From: Phallusia mammillata
Lineage: Eukaryota
Direction: 5' to 3'
DNA length: 64,000 bases
NCBI GenBank assembly: GCA_965637545.1
Contig: OZ281497.1
Span: 18,910,001 to 18,974,000, forward strand
The notes beneath the pieces are model-generated. The model was given only the letters and a program-made list of their open reading frames with translations, did no database searches and had not been told where the DNA came from. The stretch's first letter is position 1; the number at the start of each line of letters is the position of its first letter. The translations under genes were made by a program, and so were the position numbers. Shown here in pieces: positions 19,750-63,400 of this stretch.

Positions 19750-20776
19750 ATGTTTACAGGTAAACAAATAATAAAGCGCTTTTCATGTGACACGTAGTAA
19801 ACGAAAGTCGAGTGGTTAGACTGCAAATTAGAAAGGATTTCGTCAAACATTAATGGTAATATCTTCTACAGAATCTAAAGGTGATATGCATAAATCTCAT
19901 AAAATAGTGTGTAAATGCTGGGCAGTTTTGTTGCATACAAAACCACATGGATCTGATTGCTTTACAAAAAGTCTGCAAGCTCTTAGCAAAAGACAATTGT
20001 ATGGAGTATCTTTAAAAAGAACTGAAATATTAATATTTGGTAGTGAAAAAACTGCAAGATGGTTTTCATCAGCTGTAGAGTCCAAAAACTACTACGATGT
20101 GTTGGGTATTAGAAAGGAATCAACCCTAAAAGAAATAAAATCTGCGTTTTATGAAAAATCTAAGCTACTTCATCCAGATACAAATGTTGATGCAGGAGAT
20201 GCTCACATTCAAGCTTTTATTGAACTTAAATCAGCCTATGAAATTCTCAGTTGCAATCCCACTCGTGCTGAATATGACAATTATTTAACCTCATTAGAAA
20301 AATCGAAGTTAAGTTTTGATGAATGGAAGTTGACTTACAAAACAGATCATCGGAGCACTGTAGGTAAACAGTACAAATCAGAACATGATTCACAATGGCA
20401 TGAAGGAAGCGATATGCAGTGGAAAGATTTTACCATTTGGGACTTGTGTTTGGTTTTGATTCTCATCGGGATGGTGGTCTTCGTTATTCGAACCGAAGAT
20501 AAACTTAAACATATTCGCCACTTTCGAACTAAAATGCATGAATCAAAATATGATCAAAGAGCAATTAATCATTTGGTTTTGCCTGCGCATATTCGAAAAG
20601 GTGCTGAGCATAAAGAGTCACTGAAAACAAGTGAGCCCACTGAAGAAAAGGTTTTTGATGAAATTCGACGCACTGGTCAGGTTTCAGATGATGCAATACA
20701 AGCTTTAAAAGATACCAAAGACAATTGTAGTGACAAGAATGGTGCAACAAAGATAAATCTTCAAACCTGGTCATAA
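19750..20776 (+). CDS. DnaJ/Hsp40 type C protein, probably mitochondrial with one TM helix (DNAJC4/DNAJC30-like)
   Basis: J domain NYYDVLGI...KEIKSAFYEKSKLLHPD...AYEILS...RAEYD, a presequence-like N-terminus ending ARWFSS, and TM WDLCLVLILIGMVVFVI. A likely 10-nt first coding exon (ATG 19750, donor 19760) splices in frame to 19872. The ORF-track start 19853 lies in that intron, and ATG 19886 is an alternative start. Confidence 0.85.
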
Positions 20777-37400: not shown

Positions 37401-40400
37401 CCAGATATTGACGTCCAAGGTCGGGGTTTAAACAATTTTTTTTTCTAGAAAGCTGTAACAGTTGTGTTACAGACACTTTAAATTAAAAAGCAATTTGCTA
37501 CAAGTGTACACATAACAAATTGTTTTTCATTTAACTTTGTTTCGCAAAACCATTGACCTGTAGTAACCTCTCAGGGTGCACACGCCAACGACTGTTTGAC
37601 CTATTGACACCGTTTTCAATAACACGCCGTCCTTACTGTTCAACAACACCGTTTAACCTAATTTATACATGCCTTGAGTGTTGATTCCTAAATTTATTGC
37701 AAAAAAACGCTACGTTATGACGAAAGAAAGTTCTGAACTGTGTTAGTAATACCTACTAGTTGACCTTAGGTAACCCGTGGTCATGCGGCGGCCGACCTGA
37801 CAACGAGCATTTAAAAAAAAACATTTATCTTGTAAAAACGTCAAGTTTATTTTTTCAACTTTATTTTGATTAACAAGTTTTGCTTGACATATACGAAACC
37901 GAAGCACGCTTATTAGGTTTAAATCACGTCATAGGTGTGAAACCTTTGCCAAAACTGAAAATGTGAGTGATAACTTAATAAAACAAAATAGCATTGCTGT
38001 GCAAAACAGCTGATTTCTGATCACCGAAACGACGTCTCGTAAAACGTCTGTCCGACGTCAAGCTGAGCCCTCCGGCTATCGTAAACCAGTGAGTTACTCT
38101 CTTGGGACTTCTGCCTACAGCAGGGGTTTCAAACTCAAACTGGTTTGGGGGCCAAAAACAAACTTTTAAGTCAGTCGGGGGCCGCACTATCGACACATTT
38201 GTTACGGTGTAACATGACAAGAAAAGACATTGCGTGATTAAAAAGTGAAATGTGCATTAATGCCACTAACTACATTAAAAAACAAAATTGTAATAAATAG
38301 GAAACAGATATACAGTGTAGCAAAGTGAAAGAGGCAACTGTGCTATATTGCTTTGTGTGGAAACAATGGCCTACAATGATGCAACAATGTACAAAATATG
38401 ACGCAACAATCGCAATTGCTGATTTTAAAAATGATCTCGCTCATTTAAACGCTGCATATACCACCAATAGAGAACGATTGTACCATGTAAATTCACCGGT
38501 CTAACAGGATATTCCGCCTAAGTAAAACACATAACTTCTAAAGATTACTTCGCGGGCCGCACAAAAACCCTTGGAGGGCCGCATGCGGCCCGCGGGCCGC
38601 GTGTTTGAGACCCCTGGCCTACAGTGTCTTTCTTGACCAAACGAGCGTTAGACACATTTACGTTTCGGGGGCCTGTGGGTGAACCGCTGGGTAATTCGGG
38701 GACAAACTTCTGGAGAATCAAGTTTGGATTAATAACTAACATTGTCCAAATTTGAATAAATTTGAAGCACTCTTTCTTTACCAAACGAGCGTTACAAACC
38801 AGCGTTAAAATTTTACGTTTCGGGGGCCTGTGGGTGAACCCCTGGGTCATTCAGGGTCAAACTTCAGGAGGATCAAATTTAGATTAATAAATAACATCTG
38901 TCCAAATTTGAATAAATTTGAAGCACTTTTTCTTGACCAAATGCATATAACAAACCATGTTTTAAATTTTTTGCATTTTGGGGGCCTGTGGGTGAACCGC
39001 TGGATAATTCGGGGTCAAACTTCAGGAGGATCAAATTTAGATTAATAACTAACATCTGTCCAAATTTGAATAAATTTGAAGCACTCTTTCTTGACCAAAT
39101 GCGTTTAAGAACCAGCGTTAGACATAAAAAAGAGGTCATAAGACAATGTTACCATGATTGTGTTGTAGTTCAGCAATCTCCTGCTGATGCATCCATTTTA
39201 ATCGATCAAGTTCAAGTTGGAGCTGGTTAACTTGGTGACTGACATCTGAGTCTTTTCCAGATGAATCTTTTGATGGTTGCGAGTCCATCTCAGTCATCAT
39301 GTCTTCGTACATTTCAACAAGCACTTGTCGAACACCAATCATTACCCTGTGAAACGGTTACCATATTTTGACATTGTCAGTAAAATCTTGCAATTCCATT
39401 GTGTGAATGCGTAAAAAATGTTCTACTTTTATTGACAAAATTGATTTTTGAAAGAATAGCTCAAATGCAAGCATCTTACTTCTCATTGTATTTCTCTATT
39501 TTCTGGATTGGAAAGTTTCCATTGGCAGTTGCAGAAGTGCTTTTGCCGTCATGTGAAGCTTCTATACTGGTTCTGGTTGTCATTGTGCTTGTTCTGACCG
39601 GTTCTATAAAATACACAAGTCAAAACATGGGGTCATCCGATAACTGAAACCTTTTTTAAACAATCTTACCTTCTGTTGGTCTTACAGCAGTAGGCTTGTG
39701 TTTAGGAATAGTGAATGAAGACAAACGTTTACCAGAGTCACCAAATGACGATTTGCTTTTATCCTGAAACTGAAAATTGTTGAATGAGTTTTGGCTGAGA
39801 AGCATTAAAATCAATAAGGAATTACATTCTGCTTGTCCAAAGTTTTTTGCTTCTCTGAAGGATGACTCGTGTGTTTGCGACTCATCACTTTTTGTGATAA
39901 GATTTTGGCTGCAGACTTCAGGTTTGTACGGTCTGTCAAAAACAGTTGGTCCAAAATTATTTTGAAACAAAACACATACAACAAAATTCAGGATTAAGAA
40001 TACGCACCTTCAGGTGGTTTTGTTTTTGGAATCTCTGTCATCATAATCTTCTTTCGCACAATTCCCTACAAAAGAAAAGTTGTGTTTTGCAACATATAAT
40101 GAACAGATTGAAACATCAAGTTTCGTATTTCTTGTAACAAGCTGATGTTTTTGTCAGACTCTTAGTTTAATAACTTTGCAATGCATTTTTGTGTCTGTTT
40201 TGTGTGAGTAATTCTACTAAAAACTGGACTGAATATGCAGTTTGCCGAATTTATTTGGCCGCATCGGCCATTTTTACAAAGTTTCGGCCGAGTAATTTGT
40301 TGCAATTCGGTCAAAACCGAATCTTTCACAAACACAAATTTAAACCATAAAACATGTCTTTTCAGCGTTATAAGGTACCACACAATCTTTCAAACTATGC

Positions 40401-43400
40401 CATAACTAAAATCATGTCAAGTAGTTAGATTTTAATGTATTGTTTTTCACACTCCGGACAACAATTAATAATTCATTGGCAGGCTAGCCATCATGCCTGA
40501 GGCAATGTTAAACCACACAGAACTAAAATTATGACGAAACGAACTGTTTGTCTGGTAGAAAAACTTGTTTTCATATAAAAGATGTAGCATACTACTCTAT
40601 GTGACGTCATAAATGATACGGTTGATATGGTTTCGGCCGAACCGAAAACTAGCCGAAGCGGTACATCTCTACTAAAAACACAGTCTTAATACATCAAAGT
40701 GCTAAAGAACTGACATACAACTGGCAAAGTTTTAACATTTTTTTCTAAAATAGATAACTTACTTCAGGATTGGTTTTCTTTGCTGTTACACCAGATCCAT
40801 CTTTCCTCACCTTTGATGATGTTTCAGGATATTTCTTTGCTTTGTCACTGCAAGAAACCAAGCTAGTTGGTAATTCACCATTTTGTCAAAAGAAACTAAG
40901 GAATATGTAACAGAAGTTACCTGGGGTGCTTTCCCTGGTCACTAGGCAACTTTTTCTTCTCCTTTCCCATGATTTTTCCATCTTTAACACCTGAAGCATC
41001 AGATGGTTTTGTCATACCATCAACTTTGCGAGCCTTGAGGATTCCACCACCAGAGGAGCTCTCTTCACCCATTTTACGTTTTATGCTTCCACTGCCTACA
41101 GCGGGCCTAGCTGGTGCTTCTGTGATTTTTCCTGGGTCTTTGTTGAGGAGAATCGATTTCGGCTTCAAGGATTTGTCACTTTCACCCTTTTTCTTAACCT
41201 TAATAATGCTTTTCTGCAGATTTCCTTTTTCATCCTGCACAAAATAAATATGCAGATTTAAGTATGTAGTAAAACAAAATGATTAAAAAAATGCGAGACT
41301 TACTCTTTTCTTTGCTTCTTCATCTTCCGGAATATCAATTACAAGTTCAGAGTCTGATTCATCGCTGTTTTGGCCCACTAAAATACAAAATTTGTTTAGT
41401 ACCTAATACAGCATATGTTGTAAAATGAATATGTTTTGAACCTTAATACACAACATCATGTTATCACATTGTAGTCTACCTTTGTTTGTTGGTTTAGGGG
41501 CAGATTTTTCAGTGGTTCCATCTGCATTAGTTTTGTCATCAGCACCTGCAAACAAAATTTAAAACTGATAAACGACATTCACAACAATTGTACATAAATA
41601 TAGCATTGATGAAAAGGAAAGGCAGCTCTAAACATATACTCATAAAGTTTGTTTGAGGCAAACCTTTTTCAACAGAGTTGGTAGTGGATTTGGTGGCTGC
41701 AATCTCATCATTACTTTCATCCGAAGATGTGTCAGACTCATCTGAACTTGAATCGTCGTCACTATTCTGTTATTTAAAATAATTTAAAAATGTAGGCCCA
41801 AATAATCAACTTGCAAGGGTAAATATAACTAACTGTGAATGAGTCTCGAAGCGATGCTTTACAGGATTCAATAGTTTTCTCAAGCAAAGACGCTTGTTTC
41901 TTATGAGCAAAAGACCGATTGCCTTTCTGTCCTCCACCAGGATGTGCTCCACTGGTTGTTACTATTTTAGATTTTTTCTTGGGCGGAGTAGCACTGGGTG
42001 AACTTCCTTCCAGCGATTCTTTCAAGTCTGAGGCACATGGATGTTATTAAGTGTGAAAACAGCTTGGCAGGATTGCAAAACATTCTTACCAGAACCAGCT
42101 AGTTTTAGATTAAGGACACTTGATCCCAAAAGTGCAGGTGATTTTGATTCCTCTTCAATTGCTTCTTTCTTAACCACAACCTGTAAAAAATAGCATTATT
42201 TTTATTAAACCCATAAAAAATTGCCAACAATACTTCATAAAAAGCCAAACATTAAACTCACAGCAGACAGAAAACAAAATTTGTCGGTCAATTAAACGTT
42301 TTTAAACAACTGTTCATCATTTCAAACAACTGAGCTCTACAAACTTGAACTTCTCATCATATTTATCAGCAATAGCTAATCCTAACAAGGGTATTGTCAA
42401 CACTTATTACAGACATTGGTGTTCCCAATATCAATAAAGTAAATACATGAGGTTTGTTTACGCTGTCTGTTGGATTATTTGAAGTTGGAATGCCAGTGGA
42501 TCTTCTGTACAGGTCCATGTGTGTGAGGGGAGTTCTCAATGGGGAATAGTCAAATGAACCAGTTTTTCGAATCACATTGTCAATGTAATTTTGTGTTTCA
42601 AGCATGGCATTGTCCAAACCCCCTACAGAAAAGTACAACCTCAAATGTTAACAAACTGTTGTTTCCAAAATATGCACGTAAACACTAACAAACCTTTTGC
42701 TCCTGGCCCTCTGCCCTTTTTCTTGTTCTTTACTGGAAATGGCATTTCTTTTGACATCAAGTAACAACCAGACAAGGGAATCCAGGCACGGTCATGCTGC
42801 CCAAAGAATCTTGCATCCACCATTCCTTTATCAATGCGCAGTGCCTACATGATAGTATGCCATTTCAAAAGCCACAACACATCAAGATCAAATATCTTAA
42901 TAAATTTCTAGTGATATCAAAGAACCTTACAAATCCTTAAAAAAGCAATTTTGGTATCAAATCTGTTATTTATCTGATATTAGTAATACTTATGGACAAA
43001 CACTACCATCTATTTTTTGTTAATGATGTATTTACATGTGTCATTTGAGCCTAGCATGAATATGTATTCAATTTAATTGTCTCTATATTTAACTTTGCAT
43101 TTGAATTTATTCATGTGTCACTGAGGAAATAAATTGTGAACCTTTGCAGGCCAGTGAGGAAATCCTTGCAGCTTTGCCCACACCAGTATGTGAGGTTCTT
43201 TACATGGCTCGCAAAACCAGTTTTCCCTTTTGCGACAGGAGTTCAAGTAACACTCAGGACATACCTCAATTTCACTCATCTATAAACAATACAAAATTGG
43301 TAATTACAAACAATAACACTTACTGGTATTACCAATCACTAATGGCTTTTCAGTGTGTTACTCTCAACAAACTGGTGGGCCATAATGTAGCAACACTAGC

Positions 43401-45068
43401 CAATATGGCTAATGTCTTGTCACCTCCTGCAGAATTGAGGCCTTATAGGTCAAAGCTATGTGCAAAGTGCAGTTTACTTAATAGCTCAATACTTTGGTAT
43501 TGATACTTTCTATTGCCTTAATAATGTGAGACAAAAAGCATCAAACACAAACCTCATGCTGGCAAATCTTTACAATGGATTTTGCGATTTGTGTGAGTTT
43601 GGTTTGTAGTCCATTATAAATTACGCAGTTGTGGACAATCCACTTTACATCAGAGAGAAAGGCCTAAAAAATACAACACAAATTATTGTATTGTTGTGGG
43701 CTCCAAACCGAAAGTTGTTTAAGCTGTTTACAAGTTTTACCTCGGTACATCCATATTTGCGTTTTTTTACATTCTTTTCGAGGGTGCTTAAATCCATGGG
43801 ATGAAACACATAATCCAGGTAGTCACTGAACTTTTTTGTATCGACTGGTTCCAGGAAAGGCTCACACTAAAATGAAAAATTTAAACTTAACTGGTTTAAA
43901 AATTTATACTCAAAATCCATTTATAAAATCCAACTGACATTTAAATATGAAAGCATGACAAAAAGCTATGACAGAAAATAAAAAATAGGAAATTCTTACT
44001 CCAGTGGTTTTCATGCGTTGCAGTGCATATCTTAGATGCAAAGCAAGCTGATCAATGCTCATCTGTGACATGGCTCGCGATTGTGTTTCTTTGCATTCAG
44101 CATCCATCACCTTTTGACACTCTGGGCAGTACCAATCTCCTTCTGGTTCCTTGGGTAAAACAAATGCAAGTTCAGAGTATTGGTTAACAACCATAATGTT
44201 TTAGGCTTTAAATTACATTAACTGGCATATATAATTTTCACAAAAACCAATTAACGAATGTTACTTTTTGCATGTGAAGGCATTTTGCATGGAACACCCT
44301 GGGGCATAATTCACAACACAACACTTCCCCTTCGCGGTGGCAAATCCAGCAATAGAAGTCGTTTCTACCATCATGCTGAAAACAAAACCAAGTTTTACAA
44401 ACCATGTTAGTTGTGTAACCATAAGTTAAACACACTACCTGTGTGTCATCTTTAATCGGAGGTGGAGGTCTTGTCTTTCTTGGTCTACCCTGTGAGCCGG
44501 GACTGGCCACATTGCCAGGTGAGTGAGCTTTTGGAGATTTTGAAGAGAGGGATGATTTTCTAGATCTCGATCCTGATGACAATGAACTTGGTGATATTGA
44601 CTTTATAGAGCCTTCAGATGGTGTTTTGGGCATAATCATTTCAATTCTGTCATCTTTTGTCAATGACATCACTTCAGGGGTTATTGCTCGTTGCTGTGGA
44701 ATGACTTCATCTTCTTCCATTGATTTGCCAACAACTGGTGTGTTTGCAGTTGACACAGTGGAAGTCTGTTCTGTGTCCATAGCAGCATGTTGTACACCAA
44801 CAGGCTGACTGCTGGCTCCACTTGGCAATGTGTCACATGTTGTTTTTGAAGTTGATTCTTCTGGTGGTGCTGAGAACTCCATTGGAAGTTGTGCAACGGT
44901 GCCAGAAAGATCAGTTACCACAGGAGTAGTTTCAGCAGATTGGGCACTAGCAGGGAAAGCATGCATTGGAGCTGTACCACTGGTTTGCATTTCCATAGGA
45001 GGGTCCTGAGCCAGCACTGAAGCTACATCACTTTGGCCTGTACTACCTTCTGGAGGTTCAGTCTCCAT
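34479..45068 (-). CDS. ZMYND8: Zinc finger MYND-type containing 8 (PRKCBP1/RACK7): PHD-bromo-PWWP...MYND
   Basis: [35 protein letters not shown]...GDWYCPEC; bromodomain EPFLEPVD...HPMDL...[11 protein letters not shown]; [22 protein letters not shown]; [13 protein letters not shown]; [42 protein letters not shown]. Last exon 36406-34479. A probable non-coding first exon lies near 46350-46600. Confidence 0.95.
36736..37256. mobile_element. hAT (Ac-like) MITE in ZMYND8 intron
   Basis: TIR CAGTGTTTCATA(A/C)CGGAACGGAACG at both ends, 8-bp TSD TTTTTAAG, many internal TTCGTTCCG/CGGTATTTCG subterminal repeats. Confidence 0.92.
38121..38616. mobile_element. hAT (Buster/Charlie-like) MITE in ZMYND8 intron
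   Basis: TIR CAGGGGTTTCAAAC / GTTTGAGACCCCTG (1 mismatch), perfect 8-bp TSD GCCTACAG, GCGGGCCGC subterminal motifs. Confidence 0.94.
38627..39122. repeat. Tandem repeat (minisatellite), ~3.3 units of 144-158 bp
   Basis: Units start at ~38627, 38771, 38927 and 39085 (partial). Shared cores are GGGGCCTGTGGGTGAACC and GTCCAAATTTGAATAAATTTGAAGCAC. Confidence 0.92.
40225..40671. mobile_element. Degenerate hAT (Ac-like) MITE in ZMYND8 intron
   Basis: Right end CGGTACATCTCTA (TAGAGATG-type TIR), flanking 8-bp direct repeat CTAAAAAC (40217-40224, 40672-40679), TTCGG/CCGAA subterminal repeats near both ends. The left TIR is eroded. Confidence 0.6.
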
Positions 45069-49752: not shown

Positions 49753-50808
49753 CTACACACTTGACGTCTGTGAAACTGCAGTGGAGCTTCGAGATCGCAG
49801 GGAAAAGTCAGACATACAGCTTTCCGAACAGATACAAAGGCGTTTCCAAGGCCACAAAATATCCCTCCAATTGTGAAACGAAATGACCAAACACAGTGAA
49901 TTGAGCAGAACGTTGAATCCCGTGAGGGCGAAGTGAAATAAAGGCGAAAGGATCGGTTCTTCGGATTCCAGCCGAACGATAGTAACTGCCATTGAGATCA
50001 CATCAGTCAGAAAGCAAACACTACCTGTGGTAATTGTTCGCCATATTAATGCGCGCATATTCGACGCGGAATGCGAAACACGTCCGTTTTGATTCGACAT
50101 CATTTTCTTTCTTTCTTGGTTCAGGCGGTACACCGGGTATATAAATAAAAATACCAGAAGGCTTTGAATGAAGGTACAGCTCGTGAGCCACGAAGCTGGC
50201 TCGAAAACGGGGTGCCATCGGTGCCAGAAAAAGGCAAGTGCCAACTGACTGAGTGCCACTGACACAACAGCCAAGATAGACAAGTTACTCATTACAATAA
50301 GTGGAGTCTTTCGTGTGTGCAAGTTCCGCAAAGGCGAGTCGCTAAAGTAGAACAAGCGCTGGCGGATCCACATGAAAACATAGGTAAGAATGATCAAGCT
50401 TCCGTATATTAATCGATTTGCCAGCATCGGACCTCCTTTGTACATTCCGGAGTGCACAATAAACTGTTGAATAGCGAGGTACACCACGGAGCCAACTGCG
50501 GCACCAGCACAGACAGCCATCATTAATGCTTTATACAAGCGACCTTGTTCCGTAATTCGACTTTCTGTTGTGTTGTTGTTCTGTCTGCTGCCCACATAGC
50601 ATGAAACGAGATAACAAAAAATTGCACAACACAGATAGATCGTTCCAATAAAAATAATGTTTAGTATGACGTACAATGACCAATCATCAAACTCGAAATC
50701 CTGAACTTCAAGCGTTGAATTACTGAAATGATTTCTGCTCGAGTTTATTGAGATGCCAAACGTTTCTTTCATGGTGTGGGTTTGTTTAGATAACATAGCT
50801 ATAGGCAA
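49753..50808 (-). CDS. Orphan seven-transmembrane (GPCR-like) protein, paralogue A, intronless
   Basis: 351-aa ORF with seven hydrophobic segments, N-terminal NxS sequons, WIRQRLFY after TM3, LFIYP in TM5, SFHNWRDILWPW after TM7 and a Ser/Thr-rich tail. Start codon uncertain (several Met). Confidence 0.82.
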   Translation of the reverse strand: MPIAMLSKQTHTMKETFGISINSSRNHFSNSTLEVQDFEFDDWSLYVILNIIFIGTIYLCCAIFCYLVSCYVGSRQNNNTTESRITEQGRLYKALMMAVCAGAAVGSVVYLAIQQFIVHSGMYKGGPMLANRLIYGSLIILTYVFMWIRQRLFYFSDSPLRNLHTRKTPLIVMSNLSILAVVSVALSQLALAFFWHRWHPVFEPASWLTSCTFIQSLLVFLFIYPVYRLNQERKKMMSNQNGRVSHSASNMRALIWRTITTGSVCFLTDVISMAVTIVRLESEEPILSPLFHFALTGFNVLLNSLCLVISFHNWRDILWPWKRLCICSESCMSDFSLRSRSSTAVSQTSSV

Positions 50809-51666
50809 CAGTGCAACTAAAGATCATTGCTTTCTGTGCAAGAATTCTACGCTGCAATGGTAGTGTTTGAAGATTCGTAGATCTTTCAAAGAATTTCTGC
50901 CTCATTCCTTAAAGAGCATCGTACTGAAGCAGGGGTGTTTCTCATTAACCCACCTTTTTGCATTCTGGAACTTGCAGCATGCATCCGGCATGAGCAGCAA
51001 AACGTCTATGATATGACTCGGCAAAATATAGTTCCGTTTTTGAGATCGCTGTTGTTGGGAAATGTCACGATTCGGATTTATATAGAGTCGTAATATAAAC
51101 TAAATCGTCTGGCATTTTTGGCGTAGTGAAATTTTTTGAACGAATTTCTAGTGCTATTCTAATTTTTGCAGGTGCACTTAAAACAAAATGCACCAAAGGC
51201 AGAGTTGGCTTTTCGTCGTATTTGTAACGTAACTTTTTTTGGTAAATCAAACTTATTTTATCCCAATTTTATGTCCAAAAGGGTTTTTGACGGGTTTACC
51301 TATTTTCAGGTACAAGTTTAAAGGGCTGATTTTTACTCGCCTTTCATCAACATTTTCTTTCCAATTCTTGTCTTGTGTTTCATTAAAAAAATTTACGTGT
51401 GGTCACTTTAATTAAGGCTCATAGAAATCAAATCCTGTCACGTGTTTGCTCGACTTGGGATACCCAAAAAATATTTGCTATGTTTTAGTGTAATTATTTG
51501 TTAAGTGCATTTTTTCTTCACCTTCACCTTTCAGTGATTTAAATGCTGCATTTAAAGAGTTCGGTTTCAGAAAAGACAACCCTATTTCTGACGCTTTGTG
51601 AATTGCGTGTTTGTAACTTTTAGTGTAGGCATACCGTTAGATGTCATGCAAGAGATATCACTCAAT

Positions 51667-51871
51667 GGTAGAGCTACTAACACTGAGCTTCACCTTTGCC
51701 CCGACCTGAGAACTTCTGGTAGGTGGCGCAATAGAGCATAGACTCAGCAATTATTCTTACCATAAACCCAAATTGCTGTAACAGCACCATAAACGCCTAT
51801 GCTCTGTTGCGCCACCTACCAGAAGTTCTCAGGTCGGACCAAAGGTGAAGCTCGGTGTTAGTAGCTCTACC
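51667..51871. mobile_element. Mutator-like (MULE) foldback MITE
   Basis: ~75-bp TIRs beginning GGTAGAGCTACTAACAC with ~4 mismatches, perfect 9-bp TSD TCACTCAAT (51658-51666, 51872-51880), ~55-bp spacer. Confidence 0.9.
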
Positions 51872-52346
51872 TCACTCAATGCATATAATCTTAATGCCGT
51901 CTTCACACGTTTCCTCTGTTTTAGCCCGAGAAACAAGTGGAAACTTTTTTTGCCTTGCTACTTGCGTTGATTCATCACACTTACTTTTGGTCTCAGAAAA
52001 AACTGATTCCCGCATATATGTTCATCTCGGTGTTGCGCATTGGTGACCTCACAAACGTCAAACGAAATTTCCAAAACCAGGATTATGAAAAGGGCGTGTA
52101 GGGGGCGTGATTAAAAGTTAGCAAACCTTTGCTTTCGGACACTGTAACATGGATCACAGGTACAAATTAGCCTGTACTAAATGCATGTGTTTTTTTACGT
52201 AAAAAACACGACTGGATTGTAGCACAACCAGGATAATAATTTTCAAGACAGCATAATAATTTGGAACACCGTCGTTTACTTTAGTTTATCACAGTTGACG
52301 CACACAAACGAAAAACCAAAAATAAAAACGAATGTAACTTCATAAA

Positions 52347-53402
52347 TTACATTGGAACGGCTACGGGCGATGCGTTTTCGTGATTCCTGTCGCAGAGGGC
52401 TTTCCAAGGAAATATCATCATTTGCCAATTGCTGAAAGACCCAACAAGTCCTGCTGTGTTACACAAACAGTTTAGGTCGGTGAATAGCATGACACCGAAC
52501 GCTAATTGAGTATTGGCGACATCATTGTTCACGATCCGTAAAATGACGTTTAAGAAGTCTGTAAAAAAGTGACCTACAGCCAGAAATAAGCATCTTCGAA
52601 GAAGTGCCTGTATTCCGTCAGATGCGATTGACATTCTTCCTTCAGAGTCTTTCCCAAAGAAACGCTTCCTTTGCTTGTTGAGTACGAATAAAGGATACAG
52701 GAACAGTATGAGCAGAGTGCTTTGCACTAGTGTGCAGCCAATTAGCCACGAAATAGCTTCGTATATCTCGTCGAATTTCACGTGCCAAAACCACACCAGA
52801 ACCATTTGTGTAGTGGCGTTCAGTATAACAAACACCAAGGACAGCGAGCTGCAGACCCTGAGGAATCGGTTTTTGTGCAGATGGCGAATCGGAGATGCAT
52901 CGTTATAAAATAGTCTTTGTCGAATCCAGAAGAACGCATACCCGAGGACGATAAGTCCACCGTAGACATACCTATCAGCGAGCTGAAGGGCATAGACATC
53001 GTCGATGGTAAACAAAATGGCCTGCTCCAAGGCAAAATGGACCAAGCACAAAAAGGCTGTGCACACGCATATTACCAACATGCCGAGCCTGTACAAAGCT
53101 GCCCCTTTGTCCACACTTCGTGTGGTGGCCTTCCTTGTGCTGAATCCATTAAATTTGTGATTTCCATTGCTACTCGATTCGACGTGGCTGTTTGCAGAGT
53201 CGTGTAGAGGACCGTTGTGCTTCCGATGCATTTCATTTCGGTGGTCAATGCTGCCCCGGGCAAAGACATAGCACACCAAGGCGCCAAATACGTAAACTGC
53301 CAATACAAACTGGATAACGATAATTCCGTAGATAATCCAGTCACCAGTTGTAAAATCGTTTGGTATCGGAAAACCATTATTTGTCGTGTTATTAACGTCC
53401 AT
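52347..53402 (-). CDS. Orphan seven-transmembrane (GPCR-like) protein, paralogue B, intronless
   Basis: 351-aa ORF colinear with 49753-50808: WIIYGII...ALVCY, ADRYVYGGLIVLGYAFFWIRQRLFYNDASPIRHLH, LFLYP, FFTD, GSFSNWQMMIFPW. N-terminal sequons NNT/NTT. Confidence 0.85.
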   Translation of the reverse strand: MDVNNTTNNGFPIPNDFTTGDWIIYGIIVIQFVLAVYVFGALVCYVFARGSIDHRNEMHRKHNGPLHDSANSHVESSSNGNHKFNGFSTRKATTRSVDKGAALYRLGMLVICVCTAFLCLVHFALEQAILFTIDDVYALQLADRYVYGGLIVLGYAFFWIRQRLFYNDASPIRHLHKNRFLRVCSSLSLVFVILNATTQMVLVWFWHVKFDEIYEAISWLIGCTLVQSTLLILFLYPLFVLNKQRKRFFGKDSEGRMSIASDGIQALLRRCLFLAVGHFFTDFLNVILRIVNNDVANTQLAFGVMLFTDLNCLCNTAGLVGSFSNWQMMIFPWKALCDRNHENASPVAVPM

Positions 53403-54470: not shown

Positions 54471-57400
54471 TCATTCTTGGCCTGTGCAGCGATCCCATGC
54501 TTGCTTAAAGCGGTTGGCGATCTCAGGGTACTTGAATCGAACCGTGAATTTTTCAATCGTGGTTGTACCCTCTGTATTATCAAAACACTTTTCGGATAAA
54601 CACCTTCACCAAGTACACAAACAAAGGCAAAAAATAGCCTCTCGGGTATTTTTGCTCAAGGTCACGAACATGGACAATGTTAGGACTAGCACACGTTTAT
54701 CAATCACGTTTACACCTTACTACCACGTTCTTACCGGCGTTATCTTGTGCGACATACATCCACGACTTTTCTGTGCTTGATATCAATCTCATACCTGGCT
54801 TGATGAGATGGTTGGCGCAAACTTTTAAAACCTGCATCACAAAAGTTTGTTTTGGGGATCGCTTTGTTTACTTACTGTGAAAAGCAAATTTTGAGCCAAC
54901 TTTTGCCAAAGAATTTTTGGGGAAAATGTGTAAACAAATATTTGCGTCAGTAAAACCGACATCTGTAAGTGGCAATTACAGTCGATTTCCACTTATACCG
55001 ATTTAATTTGAGATTAAAATCATGTCTCATGTGCCGAAATAATTAAATCATATGGCTTACCTATTACAGGTAAATTTAAGTCAGGACAAGGGCTTTTACG
55101 CCGAATAGGAATTCAGCACCGAAAGAGGCGGGTGTTTGTGTAGGTAGAAAAATCTTTATTTACCTGTTCTCGTCGCATAACAACCCTGTAGCTGTTGTGT
55201 ATGGGATGATGCAAAATTTTGATGTCTCCTAAACCGCGTTCTTTCCACGCGTCCCCAGCCTGATCGAAGCGATACAACTTACATCGTTCCTGGAAAATTA
55301 CCTGCAGAAGAAAAACACGTTGTACAATAAAACACGTTGTACTCCTTTAGGTAAAGTAGCCAACTTGTTAACAGCGAACTTGCAACACGAAATATGTTTT
55401 AATCGATAAAATCATTTTATCTTAACATAGGGTCACGAAATTTTTAAGCCAGGTTTGGGAGTTTTCATAAGAAGTGAAATTTAGATGGTGTATGGCAGGT
55501 GCGCCAGCTTTAACGCGAATTTGAATGCCCAAATTGTACGAAACTTTTGGGTTCTAACATTTGGCCAATCAAATTCGCGTTAAAGCATTTCAGTTTGTAA
55601 AAATAAGACAATTTATGTGTTTTTCCCTTTACCTGCTGTATTATTTTGGAAACAAAATGGCGTAGATGAGGCCTTATCACGTAACAAAAGGTTGAACAAC
55701 TTTTTGTTTGAAAATCAAAACGACATAACACAACATATTCGCTGCTGTATGATTTCGCTAAAGCTTGATTTTTTTCGCTACTTGGTCCATGTTTTCAAGG
55801 ACAGCTGGATCAAGTCGTATTTTGGAGATATGTGTTTTTTCAGAAAAATAAAAGTGAGAATGGGTTTTATAAAACGAAACCACGAAACCTCAAAACCAAA
55901 AGAGTTTTAAATAACATGCTTTTTTGTTGAAATGACATTGGGTGTGTTTCATTAAACATGATGTACCCAGTATATTAAGTGCCAGTTACAAGTTGCAAAA
56001 CAGAATATATCATCTTCACAAACTGATTTCTTCCTACTCTACAACAAATTGGGCTCAAAACAGGTTGGAAATTAGTGTTCACACGACATGTTCCAAAAAA
56101 TAATAATGTGTTTGTAACTGTAGCGTACTTTATTATACCCGCTACATTTGCGTACGTATGTAAGGAGTACTGACCTTAACCTAAATTGCTAAGTGTCTCG
56201 TGAAATTTTACCACATACATGCAAATGTGTTGGGCCTTCCTACCAGGAATATCAGTAAAAACTAAGCATCACCATAGAGTCATCACACGTCGGTGAACAT
56301 ATTTACAGTTTTCGGAAACCGAGTCAACGATTCTATAAAAAAAACTGCTGCACATGACTGATTGACTTGGTAATTCGCCGTGTAACGTGGCTGTCTAGTA
56401 GTCACAACAGTTTTTTATATGGAAGCCGAGGCTATTGGGTCAAATGTTACGCCACACTTTTAGGCACAATCAAATACGAACGACCTCTTAAACATCTAAA
56501 AATAGAATCAGTGTTAAATTATTATTTATTATTTTGAGACGTCATATGTATGTGACGTCACAGTGGCGAATACAGATTACGACAAGAATCAAACATTCGA
56601 TGTGTAATATGATTATACTTAAGTAAATGTACGCCAATATAGCTTTCTGAACCTGTACACTGTGGAAAAGACAATTGTTTTAAAAAGAACCAATTTGCGT
56701 TGTTGTAAATTGAACGTGGAATCTTTTTTAAGGCCTGTAACTGACCTCTTCGTCTTCTTCCCCGGTTTTCACCTCAATCTTGGGCGGAGGTTCAGCCATT
56801 GCTGGTTTGTATTCTGGATCATAAGCTTCAGGGTCTTGCTCTTTTTCGACGTTGCTGAACAACACCTTATCCGCGGCAGAAACGTTGAACTAAATAAAAA
56901 AGCGGCAAACAATCAGAAATATATAAACTCAATCTCCGATTAAAGGTTTGGAACTGAACACATTTGGGAGGTTTGTGATTGATAGGTAACAGACGTTTTT
57001 TACAAATACAAAACAGTACTTACAAAAGTTGTACATCACGTATGACTGGCCTAACTGACAGGACGAAGTTACCTAACAATCACACTTACCGCTGCATCTT
57101 TTCTGCTACCGAACGACTGGTTGTTGGTAGCACTTGAAGCCATAGCTGCAAACGTGAACGTTGAGGAGGTAAAGTTTCCGAACAGGTTTCCTCCTTCCGA
57201 AACAGACTGCACAGGTTCCGCCGGGTTCTCGGTCTGTTCAGGTGGTTCTTCTTCAATTTCCACTTCAACCCTCTGTGGTTCGGATTTTGACTCCTCTGCA
57301 ACTAAGGAAACGTTATAGCAGCATTGGAAAACAAATCCCCCAATAAACTATCCCGCAACTTGGCTTTCGCGACCATGTTGTGAGTATGCTGTTAAGCTTA

Positions 57401-60400
57401 CCTTCAGGTGGGGGTGTCTCGGGGGCTGTGTAGTCACCGGTTGTTTCACGTGACTGATCGGGAGCATATGATTGGTTTTCCTCCGCGACGTCTTCTTCGG
57501 GATTGTCTCTTTGCCTGATGTAGTCAAATATTCGGTCCTCCTCATCGCTATCAAGGTCTATTAATAAAGAAACGTTTTTTTACATTAAGGATGAATGACT
57601 TAAGAAATATGGGCAAGAACTAAAAAAACAATGGGTCCTCCTGTAAAACGCTTCGGCAATCTTAAATTGAACTGACAAAGGTATGCAAGAGCAGTGACAA
57701 TGTGGACAAATGGTTTGGAACACTCAAAGACATATGTGAAGACAATTTGGATTACAATATAAACGGCTACTGGAGTTACAAAGGGACACAAATACACAAG
57801 CAGTGGTGGAAATAAATACATCCAGTTTTTCAGGTATTTTGGTAACGGTTTCACACTCAACGAACCTTCCAGGCCAGTTTCGTCCTCGTACAAAAAGAAG
57901 GTGGGAGGGAGACGAAGCTGAATGGCTCGCTGTCGCTGATCTTCTGTGGGCGTGGCCTCCCACACGAATATCACGTCTTGGGAGGGATCATCGCTAGGAA
58001 CGGGGCGTGTGCCTACGAAGCCACAAAAGATTGTGCAATGTGATGCAACAAGACGCATGGTCACAGTTTAGAGTTTTATGATGAATTCAACGATCCAGAA
58101 GATTGTAAACAAGTGGTTCCATAACTGGGTTTCAAGAACCCTAATGGTCGGTGAATGCCAAGAAAAGTTTAACTCCAAGATTTAAACAAAGCAGTTTTAA
58201 AGGATTACACCATAGAAAATACTGCACATATAACTCCTGCTCATAAGTATAAAAATACGATTTCTGATTTTTTTTTCTTCCAATCATATCACACCTCATT
58301 TTTTATTTCGAATATATTTAAACAAAATAGCTGCCGGGAAATTTCGGATGGGTGACCCAAATTATTGAAAGAGTTGGTTACCAGAAAAAAGTTGGGACCA
58401 CTATTATAAATGGATAAAACAGCACCAAACTCATGGCATATAGGTGGGTAAATACAGTCAAGCATTTCATCGATCGATCAGAACATACTTTTGTCTTGTG
58501 CATTAGCGCCGGCATTGGTGTTGTTATAGTTTGTGGACGAAAACTTAAAGGGTGCCACAGCTGTCTTTGGTTTTGCAAATACGTCGGTAAAAGGTTGTGG
58601 AGCGCTTGACGAGGCACCAACAGCGGAAGGTGGGTCATGACCGAACAATGATTTGATCACAGCTGGCTTTTCCACCTGTTATGGAGAAATGGAAAAGGAT
58701 TTTAATTTCTTAACGAACTGGGTGCTTACGCGGACAATTTTTTTCGCATAAGATTTAACACAGAATATTTTTCGGTCGTTTAATAAAATGTACGTTTTAT
58801 GTTTTGAAAATAGCTGTGTCATTTCGAACGATTTTTTAAACTATACAGAACTGGTTAGTGTGACTTCAAAGTACTTTAGCAAGCAGAATGTTCACAAATT
58901 TGAACACCGACCTGACTTGCTGGAGGTTTATCGGGTTGAGTGCTGACTGGTGCTGGTGTGCTCGTACTTCCAAAGTTAAAAGAAATTGAACTAAAGTTGA
59001 AATTGGATGAATCGGCTGCCGGTTTCGGACCTTTAGCTTCAAACAAAAATGGCATTGCGACAAAACAAATTGACACACACAAAAGAGTTTATAAACAAAT
59101 TCGATTTATTTTTTTTGCAAAGTATAACCGCAGAAAGCATTTTCATTAGAATCTTACTGAAAAGGTTTTCGCCGAATTTAAAGCCTTTCCCGAAATCCTT
59201 TTGGAGCGGACTTTCAACATTGGCGAAGGAAAACAAAGGAGCGGCGGCGATGGGCTTCACAGGAGATCTCTGCGATGATTTTGACGTGTCCCCACCACCA
59301 GAAACAATCGACTCGTCCTCCGGTGCAGTTGTGTCTGTTTATAAATTCACAACTGCATTGAAACGCATGGAATTATATCTTGATGCACCCAAACATGGTA
59401 TGTACACTTGAATATGTCCATAAGAATTACCAAAGTTTATTTTATTAAACTGTTAAATGGAAAAAAGCATTAGTTGTTAAGGTACAGACAAAAAACAACA
59501 AAATTACCAATTTAGGCATGTCTGGCTAAAAACACTGATTTTGACACAGGACGTCAACTACGAACCCTGTTACATTGAATGATTGATCTGATGTCAAACA
59601 GACGACTTCCTTACAAGGATAACATTGTTCTCTTGTTATATAACAAGTGTTTAAATAGAAACAAAATGATGTGACGCTGGTGACTGCACTTGCATGAATA
59701 AACTTTAGTCATGAGGACTATACGTAACGAATTGTTTTTGTAATTTGGCGAGCCACATGGACTGAAGAGTTGCATATATAAGTTATTTGTGGTCACTATT
59801 CAAAAAATTGCCTTTTTGACTGCTTTTACTGTTTTTACGCGCTACTTGATTTTAGATTTATTCATTTGGGAATGACACAAGTTGATGTCGAAACGTCATG
59901 CTTTATACAAATATATTGGCTTGTTTGTTTCTGGTCAAAAAACATTTCTTTTGGTTGTGAAAGTTTGTTTTTGCCTTCTCATGGTTTATTTATGCTGTAT
60001 GCAAAACAGTAAACACACAAAGCGTAGGTCGAATTTGACAAAGTGGAAAAGTGTGAAAGACAGGAAAACTTACAAGATTGTTCCACACTTCCATGATAAG
60101 AGTCCATAAGTTTTCCGTCTGTTGCCGCTTGTTTGGCTTCGTCCACAGCTTCCAGGAAGGTAGATGCGATTTCGGGAGTCTTAAACTTGATTGCAAATTG
60201 CAGAAGCTGAACAGAAAAGTCACGGTGGCATTATGAATGACCAAGGCACCTTTTTTCATTAATGGTCGATGTTGTTAACAATAGTATGACCCAAATGTAT
60301 TGCTGATATTTGTACACGTTGTCAAAACCAGGTTTCCACAATATGTAAGTATACAATTCTCTTCTGGTATCAAGAGTGACCAATAAGTTATTTGTCTAGA

Positions 60401-63400
60401 TAAAAATCACCTTGCCACTGTTTAAACAAAATTTTACATCAACTTTGCGGTATTTTGAATATGTTCATGGGTGTGTCTGGTAATCTAAACTTAACCAACC
60501 TCTCCGTTCGGTTTGTCTGAGTCCGAAAAGTCGGTGGCAGTCCACATCAAACATTTCGGGTCTTTGTTAGTGAAGGCCATGTCCATTGTCACGTGGTGAT
60601 TCAGACAAACTTTTAAAACCTTAAAAACAAAAAGTTTTGTAGGACATAGTGGAGTTGGCTGGTACAGAGTATGTTTTTAAAGTAGATTGTTTACTTGTTC
60701 TCTTCTCATGACGAGGCGGATTTTGAATGACTCGGTATTTTGCAGCAGTTTGATTTCGCCCAAACCGCGTTCCTTCCATTCCTTGGTGTCCCGATGAAAC
60801 ACGTACAACTTTGATCTGCTCCCAAACAGAACCTAAACAAGAATACAAGTGTGCTTAAGATCGTGCTGTTTAGCCGATGGCATTTACGCCTTTTTCTAGT
60901 ATATGAACTACATAAAACTGACCAAAACAAAGACAATTCGGATTTCGTCAACAAAAACGGTGTTATTTACTTAAAATTTATAGGAAAGAAGTGCCAGATT
61001 GTTGGTGCTTTTTTAGAAAATATTTCGCAATATTGTGTTTTCCGATTATTTTTGCAGTGCATTAGGTATCAACAGACACAAATGAAATTGTGAAACAATG
61101 AATACAGTCTTGTGTTGAAAATAATTTTCATGTGTCGTAAGTGAGCGCAAACTCACGAAAACCGGTCAAGACCTGAATTATGTCCGTGCTACTTGAATAG
61201 TTTGTCGCGATTTGACACTTTAAGGTGATGTCATATACAAGACATTGCAATGTCTTTAAATGAACCTATATTTGTATAGGTCCACTACATTTAGCCCTTA
61301 TTTCCGAAAGCAATTAACAAGTCACGATTTGACTTGTTATACACTTCCCAGTCTTAAACAAACTCTTTAGGCAAGTTCAATGCGTCATCTAGCATGCTAT
61401 GATCGAATGCGATGTCATGTTTTAAACTTGGCCCAAAAAGTCCCAAAGACGAAGCACTTCCGTATTTTAGCATTACTCAGCACGAGCCACGTATTTGTGA
61501 ATTTCATTTTCTGTCTGATGCTATAAATAAACGAATAGGAACTATTTACACGCTGGGTTACGCCCACTACAAGTCAATAAAAGCGAGTCATTAAGCAATG
61601 GAAAATTTTGCCCGGTCACGTTTGGAATATAACCCCAAACAATGATGTCAGCATAGCTTCTTGCGTGGAAATTAGTAAAAAAAATGTTTGTTTCATTCGG
61701 CTATATAGCAACAGAGATTTTATGTGTTTAGTTTTGGGGGCATCGTATTGAGTGCCGAACATCACTGCAACGGTCAGTTCCTAAAAGTTGGGGACAAAGG
61801 ACGGTAAACAAAGAGATTCACGAATCAGAATAGCTTTTAACTTTGCTTATAATACAACGCTATGTTCAGTAAACATTTGTCACATGATTACTGGCACCAT
61901 GTAACTCGAGTATTCAACACTGACCATATGAAATCACACAGGAACATACGGTTAATTGCTTGCTTGTGATAAAACCACTTAAAGTCGGTGATTATGGTGG
62001 ACAAAGAAAAAAAGATTTAAAGCCGAAACATATGGTTTTGTTTGCTATGTTTTTCAACCAGTCCATCAGCTATTGACCTTAATTGCAATCAAGCCGTTCC
62101 ACAAATGCTTAGCTGAGTACATTATGTAAATACATAACAGGATGACAGAATTTTTGACAAAATCATGTTAACATTTAAAACATTCTTTTACATAAAAGGC
62201 CAACGTAATAAGACAGGTAGCCATTGCATGATAAGTAAGATGCAGACAGTGTACATCGTTACTTCCTATAAGATCCCATCTATGTAGCTGGCGACACAAC
62301 AGTGACGGTACAAATATATGAGCTATTGCTGCCAGGCAAGTTTATAGAGCTCTTCTGGCAAATGTATTTTTATTCCGACGTCCTATACAGGTCGCCTTCA
62401 TCAGGGTAAATAACACTGAATGTGCGTCGTACAGTTGACGGTATAAGCTAGAGTTGTCACTATAGGGCACTCCAGTTAGTTGGGAGTAACATACTGAAAG
62501 TCATGCCTCACAAAATCTGTAGGATGCCACAATGAGACACAACCACAGATAGATAGATACACAATAAACAATAAACTGCCTAGAAACCAAACCGAAGTGT
62601 CTCAATCTAAAAAAAACACTATCTAATACGCTGATGATACCTTATAGGTCGAAACAATGTTTACTGTCCGCAGCTCACATAGATGTACCTTGATAGAAAA
62701 CAGCCAAATCATACTTAACTAATGGGTTTAACTTTTTTTTTGGTAAAGTAGTTACATAACATCGGTGCGGAAGATAAACAGAATCTTCTAAACCTAACCT
62801 GTTCCTCTTCTTCTCCCGTCACAAGATCCACTTTGTCTGGGAGCGGAATTTTCGGTTCAAAGTAAACGTCGGCTGTGTAGGAATCCTCACTGTAAAGATG
62901 TTGTACTAAGTTACTTATATGTTTTGGGGTTCGGTGTTTTGCTTACAATAATACGTTACCTCGTGGCTGAGCAAACGCTGATGCCTCGTTGTTTAGGTTT
63001 GTCGGGACTGACATCTGGTTTCATCTTAAATTGGAACTTATCTAAACCAATGGAGGTTGGAATTTTCGGTGCACTGTCAGCTGTAAAACAATGTTACATT
63101 TGGTACACAATTCACGGTTTATATACCAAACCCGAAACAAACAAACAAACAAACAAACAAACAAACAAACAAACAAACCTACCAGTGTATTTGTGTAAAA
63201 CATAACGTTTCAGCGGCAACTTGTGTCATTCTCCAATAAATTTTGTTGCCATCGCAACGTTACGATTTACACAAATATACTGGCTTGTTTGTTACCGGTT
63301 AAAATTTTACATTAGTGTGCAGAAGTATGTTTTATAAAGATTATTTTTTTCACAGGATTGCCATTAGAGAACGTAAAAAAGTACCAAAACGGAAAAAAAT

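What the first reader, a model, noticed from the sequence alone, without database searches (positions are those of the whole stretch)
49753..53402. Tandem intronless orphan 7TM receptors with a WIRQRLFY signature and no class-A motifs: candidate lineage-specific chemoreceptor family
Seen: two colinear ~351-aa 7TM ORFs, strongly diverged except for (N/D)RxxYGxLIxLxYxFxWIRQRLFY..SP(L/I)RxLH, LFxYP, F(L/F)TD and SFxNW...(W/F)PW. RQR stands where DRY would be, there is no NPxxY, no Cys at the top of TM3, and ECL2 is only ~10 aa, so the canonical disulfide is absent. N-termini are glycosylatable and extracellular-facing parts vary most. Established: intronless, tandemly duplicated, fast-diverging 7TM genes typify chemoreceptor families, and Ciona lacks vertebrate-type odorant receptors. 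Inference: these may belong to an uncharacterised sensory receptor family. GPCR function itself is unproven.
Basis: partly seen in the sequence, partly recalled or inferred. Interest (0 to 1): 0.72.

Follow-up and report, generated by a model that had tools for sequence, protein, structure and literature searches.

The report
Sea-squirt orphan seven-helix receptor pair
Two neighbouring intron-free genes encode members of a large sea-squirt-only family of seven-helix, GPCR-shaped membrane proteins; a 2020 Ciona paper briefly proposed this family as a stand-in for the smell receptors tunicates lack, and what the proteins bind is still unknown.

Summary
Two uninterrupted minus-strand ORFs (52347-53402 and 49753-50808) encode 32%-identical proteins. 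Each has seven helices, an outside N-terminus and the shared WIRQRLFY motif.

They belong to a large family: 1,104 cluster representatives, and at least 118 matches (roughly 100 loci) in this genome, mostly intronless and often in tandem arrays. Every named member is an ascidian protein (Ciona, Clavelina, Styela). There is no Pfam or PDB sequence match. The AlphaFold model (pLDDT 84.6) matches GPCRs best, with bitter-taste receptor TAS2R14 on top (Z 18.0), but microbial rhodopsins score nearly as high.

The family is not new. Johnson, Razy-Krajka and Stolfi (2020) described it around Ciona KH.C3.516 and suggested a chemosensory role. Their supplement lists KH.C8.90, the Ciona counterpart of this pair, and shows it enriched in papilla axial columnar cells. 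This scan also met the family at two other places in this genome.

The pair is a conserved, low-copy subfamily that sits just downstream of RanBP2, as in Ciona. It alone has lost the family's TM3-ECL2 cysteine pair and has a very short ECL2.

GPCR signalling and chemoreception remain unproven. Expression in this species could not be tested.

The parts
52347..53402 (-). ORF B. Intronless 351-aa 7TM gene (ATG start, stop included). It is the positional ortholog of Ciona intestinalis LOC144745809 / C. robusta KH.C8.90.
49753..50808 (-). ORF A. Intronless tandem paralog of ORF B. The open frame runs from the TTG at 50808; the first ATG at 50796 gives 347 aa. It has a long branch in the tree but keeps all family-invariant residues.
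52905..52928 (-). WIRQRLFY motif of ORF B, at the cytoplasmic end of TM3 and start of ICL2. It holds the family-invariant W159 and near-invariant R161 and Q162.
50347..50370 (-). WIRQRLFY motif of ORF A.
54486..60832 (-). 3' exons of RanBP2 (Ran-binding and IR1-M parts). This is the syntenic anchor: its last matched coding exon ends about 1.1 kb upstream of ORF B on the same strand, as in Ciona.

Best explanation
What they are: ORF A and ORF B are two intact, intronless paralogous genes. Each encodes a seven-helix membrane protein with its N-terminus outside and a GPCR-like fold. They belong to the tunicate-restricted 7TM family first noted around Ciona KH.C3.516. Within it they form the RanBP2-linked KH.C8.90 subfamily.

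Shown here: homology, family size, topology, fold class, synteny, and loss of the Cys pair in this subfamily.

Inferred mechanism: they act as cell-surface receptors. The outside loops are only 2-4 residues in the model, and the TM4-TM5 link is 9-10 aa against a family median of 24. Any ligand pocket must therefore lie inside the outer half of the helix bundle, which is also the more variable half. The conserved inner face would contact one shared transducer. It consists of W-x-R-Q..FY at the TM3/ICL2 junction, K/R-R at the base of TM6, Asn-x3-Asn in TM7 and F-x2-W-x5-P in helix 8. The most likely transducer is a heterotrimeric G protein. In Ciona the ortholog's transcripts are enriched in papilla axial columnar cells, which also express PLC-beta and the IP3 receptor, so a Gq-PLC-IP3-calcium route is the leading guess. 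The ligand is unknown, and so is whether it is external or internal.
For: - Intact paired ORFs, 32% identical, E 2e-52.
- Family: 1,104 representatives at E<=1e-3 and 140 at E<=1e-30. At least 118 matches in this genome, most of them uninterrupted 300-375-aa frames, with arrays on C3, C1, C4 and C7.
- All named members are ascidian 'uncharacterized' proteins.
- The subfamily clade has 100/99 support.
- The Ciona ortholog is a single-exon gene directly after RanBP2. RanBP2 exons lie at 54486-60832(-) in the window.
- Model pLDDT 84.6, pTM 0.84.
- Best fold matches are TAS2R14 at Z 18.0 and 17.2, then TAS2R46 and GPR35 at 16.4 and many class A receptors at 15-16.
- Inner-half conservation 0.45 against 0.30 for the outer half, p 2e-7; K/R count 20 inside against 0 outside.
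- The spacing from the TM3-top Cys to the invariant Arg is 25 residues in 96 of 97 members. Own-genome class A receptors show the same C3.25-R3.50 spacing.
- Johnson et al. 2020 list KH.C8.90 as a family member and show it enriched in the ACC cluster: logFC 1.46, adjusted p 8.7e-4, 58% against 2.2% of cells.
Against: - No sequence link to any GPCR class: no Pfam hit for any of 111 members, and only an out-of-register rhodopsin match in PDB.
- Profile-profile comparison with class A is weak and unstable: probability 42% with 6 sequences, 8% with 21.
- Microbial rhodopsins (Z 16.1-16.2) and TMEM87A (Z 15.5) score almost as well as GPCRs, and Foldseek gives no E<=1e-3. The fold evidence therefore says 'seven-helix bundle of GPCR type' rather than proving a GPCR.
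- The D/E of DRY, the Pro and Tyr of NPxxY, and CWxP are all absent.
- No coupling, ligand or localisation data exist for this subfamily.
- The ACC enrichment comes from one supplementary table for another species.
Confidence: 0.6

Rival explanations
1. The pair are chemoreceptors for external cues such as settlement or food chemicals. They would be part of a tunicate replacement for the missing odorant receptors.'s suggestion.
For: - The family is large, mostly intronless, tandemly arrayed and lineage-restricted.
- The outer half of the bundle varies more than the inner half.
- The best structural match is a bitter-taste receptor.
- KH.C3.516::GFP sits at the exposed apical tips of papilla cells, and KH.C8.90 is enriched in the same cells.
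- Tunicates lack OR, V1R, V2R and TAS2R families.
Against: - This subfamily is low-copy, with orthologs in several ascidians and conserved synteny. That fits one conserved ligand rather than a diversifying repertoire.
- Axial columnar cells are contractile myoepithelial cells, not neurons.
- No ligand or response has been shown for any family member.
- The extracellular surface is minimal.
Confidence: 0.3
2. They are receptors for an endogenous signal, such as a transmitter, lipid or peptide released by neighbouring cells. That would make them ordinary signalling GPCRs of a divergent tunicate class rather than sensory receptors.
For: - The subfamily has orthologs across ascidian orders, and RanBP2 linkage is shared with Ciona.
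- Several other subfamilies also show orthologs across species.
- Johnson et al. raise this alternative for KH.C3.516.
Against: - A family of about 100 genes with tandem arrays in one genome is more than known endogenous ligand systems usually need.
- There is no similarity to any known transmitter or peptide receptor family.
Confidence: 0.25
3. They are seven-helix proteins that do not signal through G proteins. Candidates are a transporter, a channel, a Golgi/GOST-type protein like TMEM87A, or a rhodopsin-like protein.
For: - Microbial rhodopsins (Z 16.1-16.2) and TMEM87A (Z 15.5) score close to GPCRs.
- No GPCR sequence family is matched.
Against: - Neither ORF has a Lys in TM7 to bind retinal (read directly from the sequences).
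- There is no GOLD or other luminal domain.
- The family keeps a TM3-ECL2 Cys pair and an Arg at the class-A spacing, followed by a helix 8.
- GPCRs fill most of the top ranks in four fold searches.
Confidence: 0.1
4. One or both ORFs are non-functional relics or chance open frames.
For: - ORF A has a long branch (1.69 against 0.77 for ORF B).
- No expression data exist for this species.
Against: - Both frames are uninterrupted for 351 codons in 38-42% GC DNA.
- Both keep every family-invariant residue.
- Homologs are intact in other ascidians, and the Ciona one is transcribed.
Confidence: 0.03

Closest known systems
Tunicate-specific 7TM family around Ciona robusta KH.C3.516 (Johnson, Razy-Krajka & Stolfi 2020, EvoDevo 11:15, PMC7397655)
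   Same: - The same protein family: their supplement lists KH.C8.90, which matches P0002, the Ciona ortholog of this pair, almost residue for residue.
- All listed members carry W-x-RQ-x-x-(F/L)Y.
- The genes occur in tandem arrays and have no BLAST hits outside tunicates.
- KH.C8.90 is enriched in the same papilla cells as KH.C3.516.
   Different: - The pair's subfamily lacks the two extracellular Cys that KH.C3.516 and about 95% of the family keep.
- Its ECL2 is much shorter.
- It is a RanBP2-linked low-copy lineage rather than part of a large array.
- The paper gave no fold analysis, motif definition or family census.
Vertebrate bitter-taste receptors, class T GPCRs (TAS2R14, TAS2R46)
   Same: - They are the best structural matches (Z 18.0, rmsd 3.5 A, 255 residues aligned).
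- Both groups are intronless, about 300-350 aa, with a short N-terminus and tandem clusters.
- From my own knowledge of TAS2Rs, not tested here: they also lack DRY, NPxxY and the TM3-ECL2 disulfide, as this pair does.
   Different: - There is no detectable sequence similarity: no PF05296 hit in 111 members and no TAS2R chain among PDB sequence hits at E<=10.
- Most of the tunicate family does have the TM3-ECL2 Cys pair.
- The lead over other seven-helix folds is only about 1.6 Z units.
Class A (rhodopsin-like) GPCRs, Pfam 7tm_1
   Same: - The fold matches (Z 15-16.4).
- The N-terminus is outside.
- The wider family has a Cys at the top of TM3 and one in ECL2, an Arg exactly 25 residues after the TM3 Cys, two Asn in TM7 at the N7.45/N7.49 spacing, and a helix 8 with an aromatic residue.
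   Different: - No PF00001 match.
- I-R-Q stands in place of D/E-R-Y.
- There is no Pro or Tyr of NPxxY, no CWxP, no Asn in TM1 and no Asp in TM2.
- ICL1 is long and disordered (about 35-45 aa).
- Profile-profile support is weak.

Membership tests
Tunicate-specific 7TM family (KH.C3.516 family, Johnson et al. 2020) | Sequence homology to listed members | tested here: met
   P0002 (36% identical to ORF B, E 2.9e-53) matches the KH.C8.90 sequence printed in their Additional file 1 almost residue for residue. This was compared by eye between and 72/76. KH.C3.516 itself carries LWVRQRSFY.
Tunicate-specific 7TM family (KH.C3.516 family, Johnson et al. 2020) | Seven transmembrane helices | tested here: met
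   Hydropathy and AlphaFold models.
Tunicate-specific 7TM family (KH.C3.516 family, Johnson et al. 2020) | Expanded in tunicates with no hits outside them | tested here: inconclusive
   All 20 representatives looked up that carry a name are from Ciona, Clavelina or Styela. Only the top 150 of 1,104 hits could be seen, and most have no organism label, so the tail is untested.
Class A GPCR (Pfam PF00001, 7tm_1) | Match to the 7tm_1 profile | tested here: not met
   No hit for ORF A or ORF B at E<=10. No hit for any of 111 family members at E<=0.01.
Class A GPCR (Pfam PF00001, 7tm_1) | E/DRY at the end of TM3, and NPxxY in TM7 | tested here: not met
   I-R-Q stands at the DRY position, so only the Arg is kept. 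TM7 has N-x3-N without Pro or Tyr.
Class A GPCR (Pfam PF00001, 7tm_1) | C3.25-ECL2 disulfide | tested here: not met
   Both Cys are absent in ORF A and ORF B. They are present in 94-95% of the wider family.
Class A GPCR (Pfam PF00001, 7tm_1) | GPCR fold | tested here: met
   Z 15-16.4 to many class A receptors over about 230-255 residues. Microbial rhodopsins score similarly.
Class A GPCR (Pfam PF00001, 7tm_1) | Remote profile-profile homology | tested here: inconclusive
   hhalign against own-genome class A alignments gave probability 42%, E 2.7e-4, in register (6 sequences), and probability 8%, E 0.004 (21 sequences). Reversed controls gave E 0.07-0.16.
Class A GPCR (Pfam PF00001, 7tm_1) | G-protein coupling | not testable with these tools
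   Needs a cell-based assay.
Class T GPCR (TAS2R, Pfam PF05296) | Sequence match to TAS2R | tested here: not met
   No PF05296 hit in 111 members. No TAS2R chain among PDB sequence hits at E<=10.
Class T GPCR (TAS2R, Pfam PF05296) | TAS2R-like fold | tested here: met
TAS2R14 is the top hit (Z 18.0 and 17.2) and TAS2R46 scores 16.4. The margin over other folds is small.
Insect OR/GR-type 7TM ion channels | Inverted topology (N-terminus inside) and OR/GR fold | tested here: not met
   K/R distribution of 20 inside against 0 outside, plus N-terminal sequons, place the N-terminus outside. No OR/GR/Orco structure appears among the top 50 fold hits.
Microbial (type I) rhodopsins | Retinal-binding Lys in helix 7 | tested here: not met
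   There is no Lys in TM7 of either ORF (sequences). The fold similarity is Z 16.1-16.2.

The most novel reading that the evidence does not exclude
The tunicate 7TM family may be the sister of vertebrate bitter-taste (class T) receptors. TAS2R-type chemoreceptors would then date to the common ancestor of tunicates and vertebrates. The RanBP2-linked subfamily, which like TAS2Rs has no TM3-ECL2 disulfide, would be a conserved papilla receptor for a settlement cue.
Probability: 0.08. Interest if true: 0.8.

Novelty: new member of a known kind. Interest (0 to 1): 0.5.

Why it matters
Tunicates are the closest living relatives of vertebrates. They respond to chemicals and choose settlement sites, yet they lack every known vertebrate, insect and nematode chemoreceptor family. 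What they sense with is an open question.

This family is the main published candidate, and it has no Pfam model, no defined signature and no known ligand. The present work adds:
- a family signature;
- a census for one genome (about 100 loci);
- evidence for a GPCR-type fold with traces of class-A-like spacing;
- a conserved, syntenic, experimentally tractable subfamily (KH.C8.90 in Ciona) whose transcripts are already seen in papilla cells.

It does not show function.

Tried and rejected
- Pfam on the pair, on paralogs and on 111 family members: nothing.
- PDB sequence search with 5- and 111-sequence profiles: nothing, or an out-of-register rhodopsin match pairing the query's TM1-TM2 with rhodopsin's TM5-TM6.
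- Word-based protein search with the 111-sequence alignment: only four hits, uninformative.
- Foldseek against PDB with both models: GPCRs on top but no E<=1e-3.
- ESM Atlas by shape and by features: fungal DUFs and class A clusters at TM about 0.55, or unnamed chordate clusters. No named family was convincing.
- hhalign against class A receptors of the same genome: suggestive with 6 sequences, weaker with 21, so not used as proof.
- PF00001 scan of the own genome: none of the listed hits overlaps a family locus.
- Literature searches for the LOC and XP identifiers and for KH.C8.90 in main texts: nothing.
- dN/dS for the pair was not attempted, because at 32% identity synonymous sites are saturated.
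- One mistyped Pfam call failed.
Full report
**Observation.** The ORF listing finds two uninterrupted minus-strand frames of 351 codons at exactly the stated coordinates: 49753-50808 (ORF A) and 52347-53402 (ORF B). ORF A's listed start is a TTG; its first ATG at 50796 gives 347 aa. The proteins are 32% identical over 337 residues, E 2e-52. Hydropathy gives seven segments in each protein. In ORF B the predicted inside loops and tail hold 20 Lys/Arg and the outside loops none, and both N-termini carry N-x-S/T sequons. The topology is therefore N-out, C-in.

**No known sequence family.** Pfam gives nothing for the pair, for four distant paralogs and three orthologs, or for any of 111 family members. 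Profiles of 5 and 111 sequences find no meaningful PDB chain. The only hit, rhodopsin at E 0.005, pairs the query's TM1-TM2 with rhodopsin's TM5-TM6 and is out of register.

**A large family.**
- An own-genome search with ORF B found six more intronless frames sharing W-x-RQ and NW..FP(W/F).
- A 9-sequence profile scored 1,104 cluster representatives at E<=1e-3, 809 at E<=1e-10 and 140 at E<=1e-30.
- The same profile gave at least 118 matches in this 240-Mb genome, with only 118 of 213 candidates scored. These collapse to roughly 100 loci.
- Most loci are uninterrupted frames of 300-375 aa. Dense arrays lie on C3 (24.24-24.31, 26.77-26.79, 8.50-8.67 and 25.68 Mb), C1 (4.46-4.55 Mb), C4 (12.675-12.683 Mb) and C7 (20.21-20.22 Mb).
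- Every representative that carries a name is an 'uncharacterized protein' of Ciona intestinalis, Clavelina lepadiformis or Styela clava. A few are tagged by UniRef as having a GPCR family 1 profile domain.

**Family signature (111-sequence alignment, ORF B numbering).**
- The invariant or near-invariant positions are: Y37 (TM1); Cys at 136 (top of TM3); L158-W159-x-R161-Q162 and Y166 (TM3 end and ICL2); S185 (TM4); a Cys in ECL2; Q227, L233, F234 and P237 (inner TM5); D282 (TM6); N311 and N315 (TM7); F323, W326 and P332 (helix 8).
- Conservation is higher in the inner halves of the helices (0.45) than in the outer halves (0.30), p 2e-7. ICL2 is the best-conserved loop.
- The TM3 Cys lies exactly 25 residues before the invariant Arg in 96 of 97 members. 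Class A receptors of the same genome with DRY, DRW or ERY also have a Cys at -25, the C3.25-R3.50 spacing.
- The family therefore has I/L-R-Q where class A has D/E-R-Y.

**What is special about this pair.**
- The sequences lacking the TM3 Cys are exactly ORF A, ORF B and their closest relatives (P0001, P0002, P0003, P0005, P0006). Almost the same set lacks the ECL2 Cys.
- Their TM4-TM5 link is 9-10 aa against a family median of 24.
- In a maximum-likelihood tree this subfamily is a clade with 100/99 support. It includes Ciona P0002 and a Clavelina tandem pair that duplicated independently. ORF A has a long branch (1.69) compared with ORF B (0.77), and the order of A, B, P0001 and P0002 is unresolved.
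- Other subfamilies also show orthologs across species.

**Synteny.** In Ciona intestinalis, P0002 is a single-exon gene that starts about 0.7 kb after the end of RanBP2 on the same strand. Translated pieces of that Ciona RanBP2 region match the window's minus strand from 60832 down to 54486, so RanBP2 ends about 1.1 kb upstream of ORF B. ORF B is thus the positional ortholog and ORF A is an extra downstream copy. In Clavelina the neighbours differ.

**Fold.**
- With the 9-sequence alignment the model had pLDDT 76.6. With 111 sequences it reached pLDDT 84.6 and pTM 0.84.
- The better model has seven long helices, a helix-8-like element, a disordered ICL1 (about residues 63-98) and outside loops of only 2-4 residues.
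- Exhaustive structural alignment of the better model ranks TAS2R14 first (Z 18.0, rmsd 3.5 A, 255 residues aligned; a second entry at 17.2). Next come TAS2R46 and GPR35 (16.4) and many class A receptors (15-16).
- Microbial rhodopsins reach 16.1-16.2 and TMEM87A reaches 15.5.
- Foldseek lists almost only GPCRs, but at E>=0.02.
- The fold is therefore a GPCR-type seven-helix bundle. The class is not resolved, and the class T lead is small.
- hhalign against class A receptors from this genome was in register (TM3 Cys, ECL2 Cys, two TM7 Asn, helix-8 aromatic) at probability 42% with six sequences. It fell to 8% with 21 sequences. Reversed controls were worse. I treat this as suggestive only.

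**Literature.**
I traced it through Poncelet & Shimeld 2020 (PMC7776563) to Johnson, Razy-Krajka & Stolfi 2020 (PMC7397655).
- They found KH.C3.516, an orphan 7TM gene specific to the axial columnar cells of the Ciona papillae. A GFP fusion was enriched at the exposed apical tips.
- Their Additional file 1 lists KH.C8.90, whose printed sequence matches P0002 almost residue for residue. It carries FMWLRQRLFY and NNWKSIMFPW (compared).
- Their Additional file 2 shows KH.C8.90 enriched in the axial-columnar-cell cluster: logFC 1.46, adjusted p 8.7e-4, detected in 58% against 2.2% of cells.
- No paper discusses KH.C8.90 in its main text.
- Kamesh et al. 2008 (PMC2396169) reported no chemosensory GPCR families in Ciona.

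**Interpretation.** The pair are real, probably functional genes of a known but barely studied tunicate family. The most likely mechanism is a surface receptor with a pocket inside the outer helix bundle and a conserved inner face for one shared transducer, probably a G protein. This is inferred, not shown. The chemoreceptor idea remains plausible for the family. For this pair it is weakened by its low copy number, conserved orthology and synteny, and it is somewhat strengthened by the papilla enrichment of the Ciona ortholog.

**Limits.** The organism is probably an ascidian other than Ciona: the Ciona ortholog is 36% identical, RanBP2 exons are 50-65% identical, and the assembly has eight large scaffolds. 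This is inference only.

Noticed in passing
window 51667-51871: A 205-bp palindromic, MITE-like element lies between the two 7TM genes. It has 75-nt arms that are 95% complementary, with a 55-nt spacer. It is a dispersed repeat: at least 40 other copies at 87-91% identity on all large scaffolds, from 425 first-look candidates.
   Followed up: partly
window 6982-10114 (+): Three overlapping ORFs carry DUF1759 and Pao retrotransposon peptidase (Peptidase_A17) domains. This looks like a fragment of a BEL/Pao LTR retrotransposon.
   Followed up: no
window 13982-14812 (+): An intronless 276-aa ORF with a complete protein kinase domain (Pkinase, E 1e-27).
   Followed up: no
window 19853-20776 (+): An intronless 307-aa ORF with a DnaJ domain (E 2e-16).
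   Followed up: no
window 27056-29512 (+): An 818-aa uninterrupted ORF with no Pfam match at E<=0.001.
   Followed up: no
window 34479-45068 (-): Large exons of a ZMYND8/ZMYND11-like gene lie downstream of the 7TM pair on the same strand. MYND and coiled-coil parts are at 34479-36452, and a weak PHD match is at 44238-45068. In Ciona the gene after the 7TM ortholog is instead a PDCD2-like gene on the opposite strand.
   Followed up: no
L040:583-1608 (Clavelina lepadiformis OX392443.1): Clavelina has its own tandem pair of this subfamily, 341 and 336 aa and 8.4 kb apart. The two are sisters in the tree, so the duplication there was independent of the one in this window.
   Followed up: partly
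G000 C1:5.33-5.73 Mb, C1:9.59-9.75 Mb and C7:0.65-0.69 Mb: The PF00001 scan shows large tandem arrays of class A GPCR genes with single long open frames in this genome. These are separate from the orphan 7TM family.
   Followed up: no
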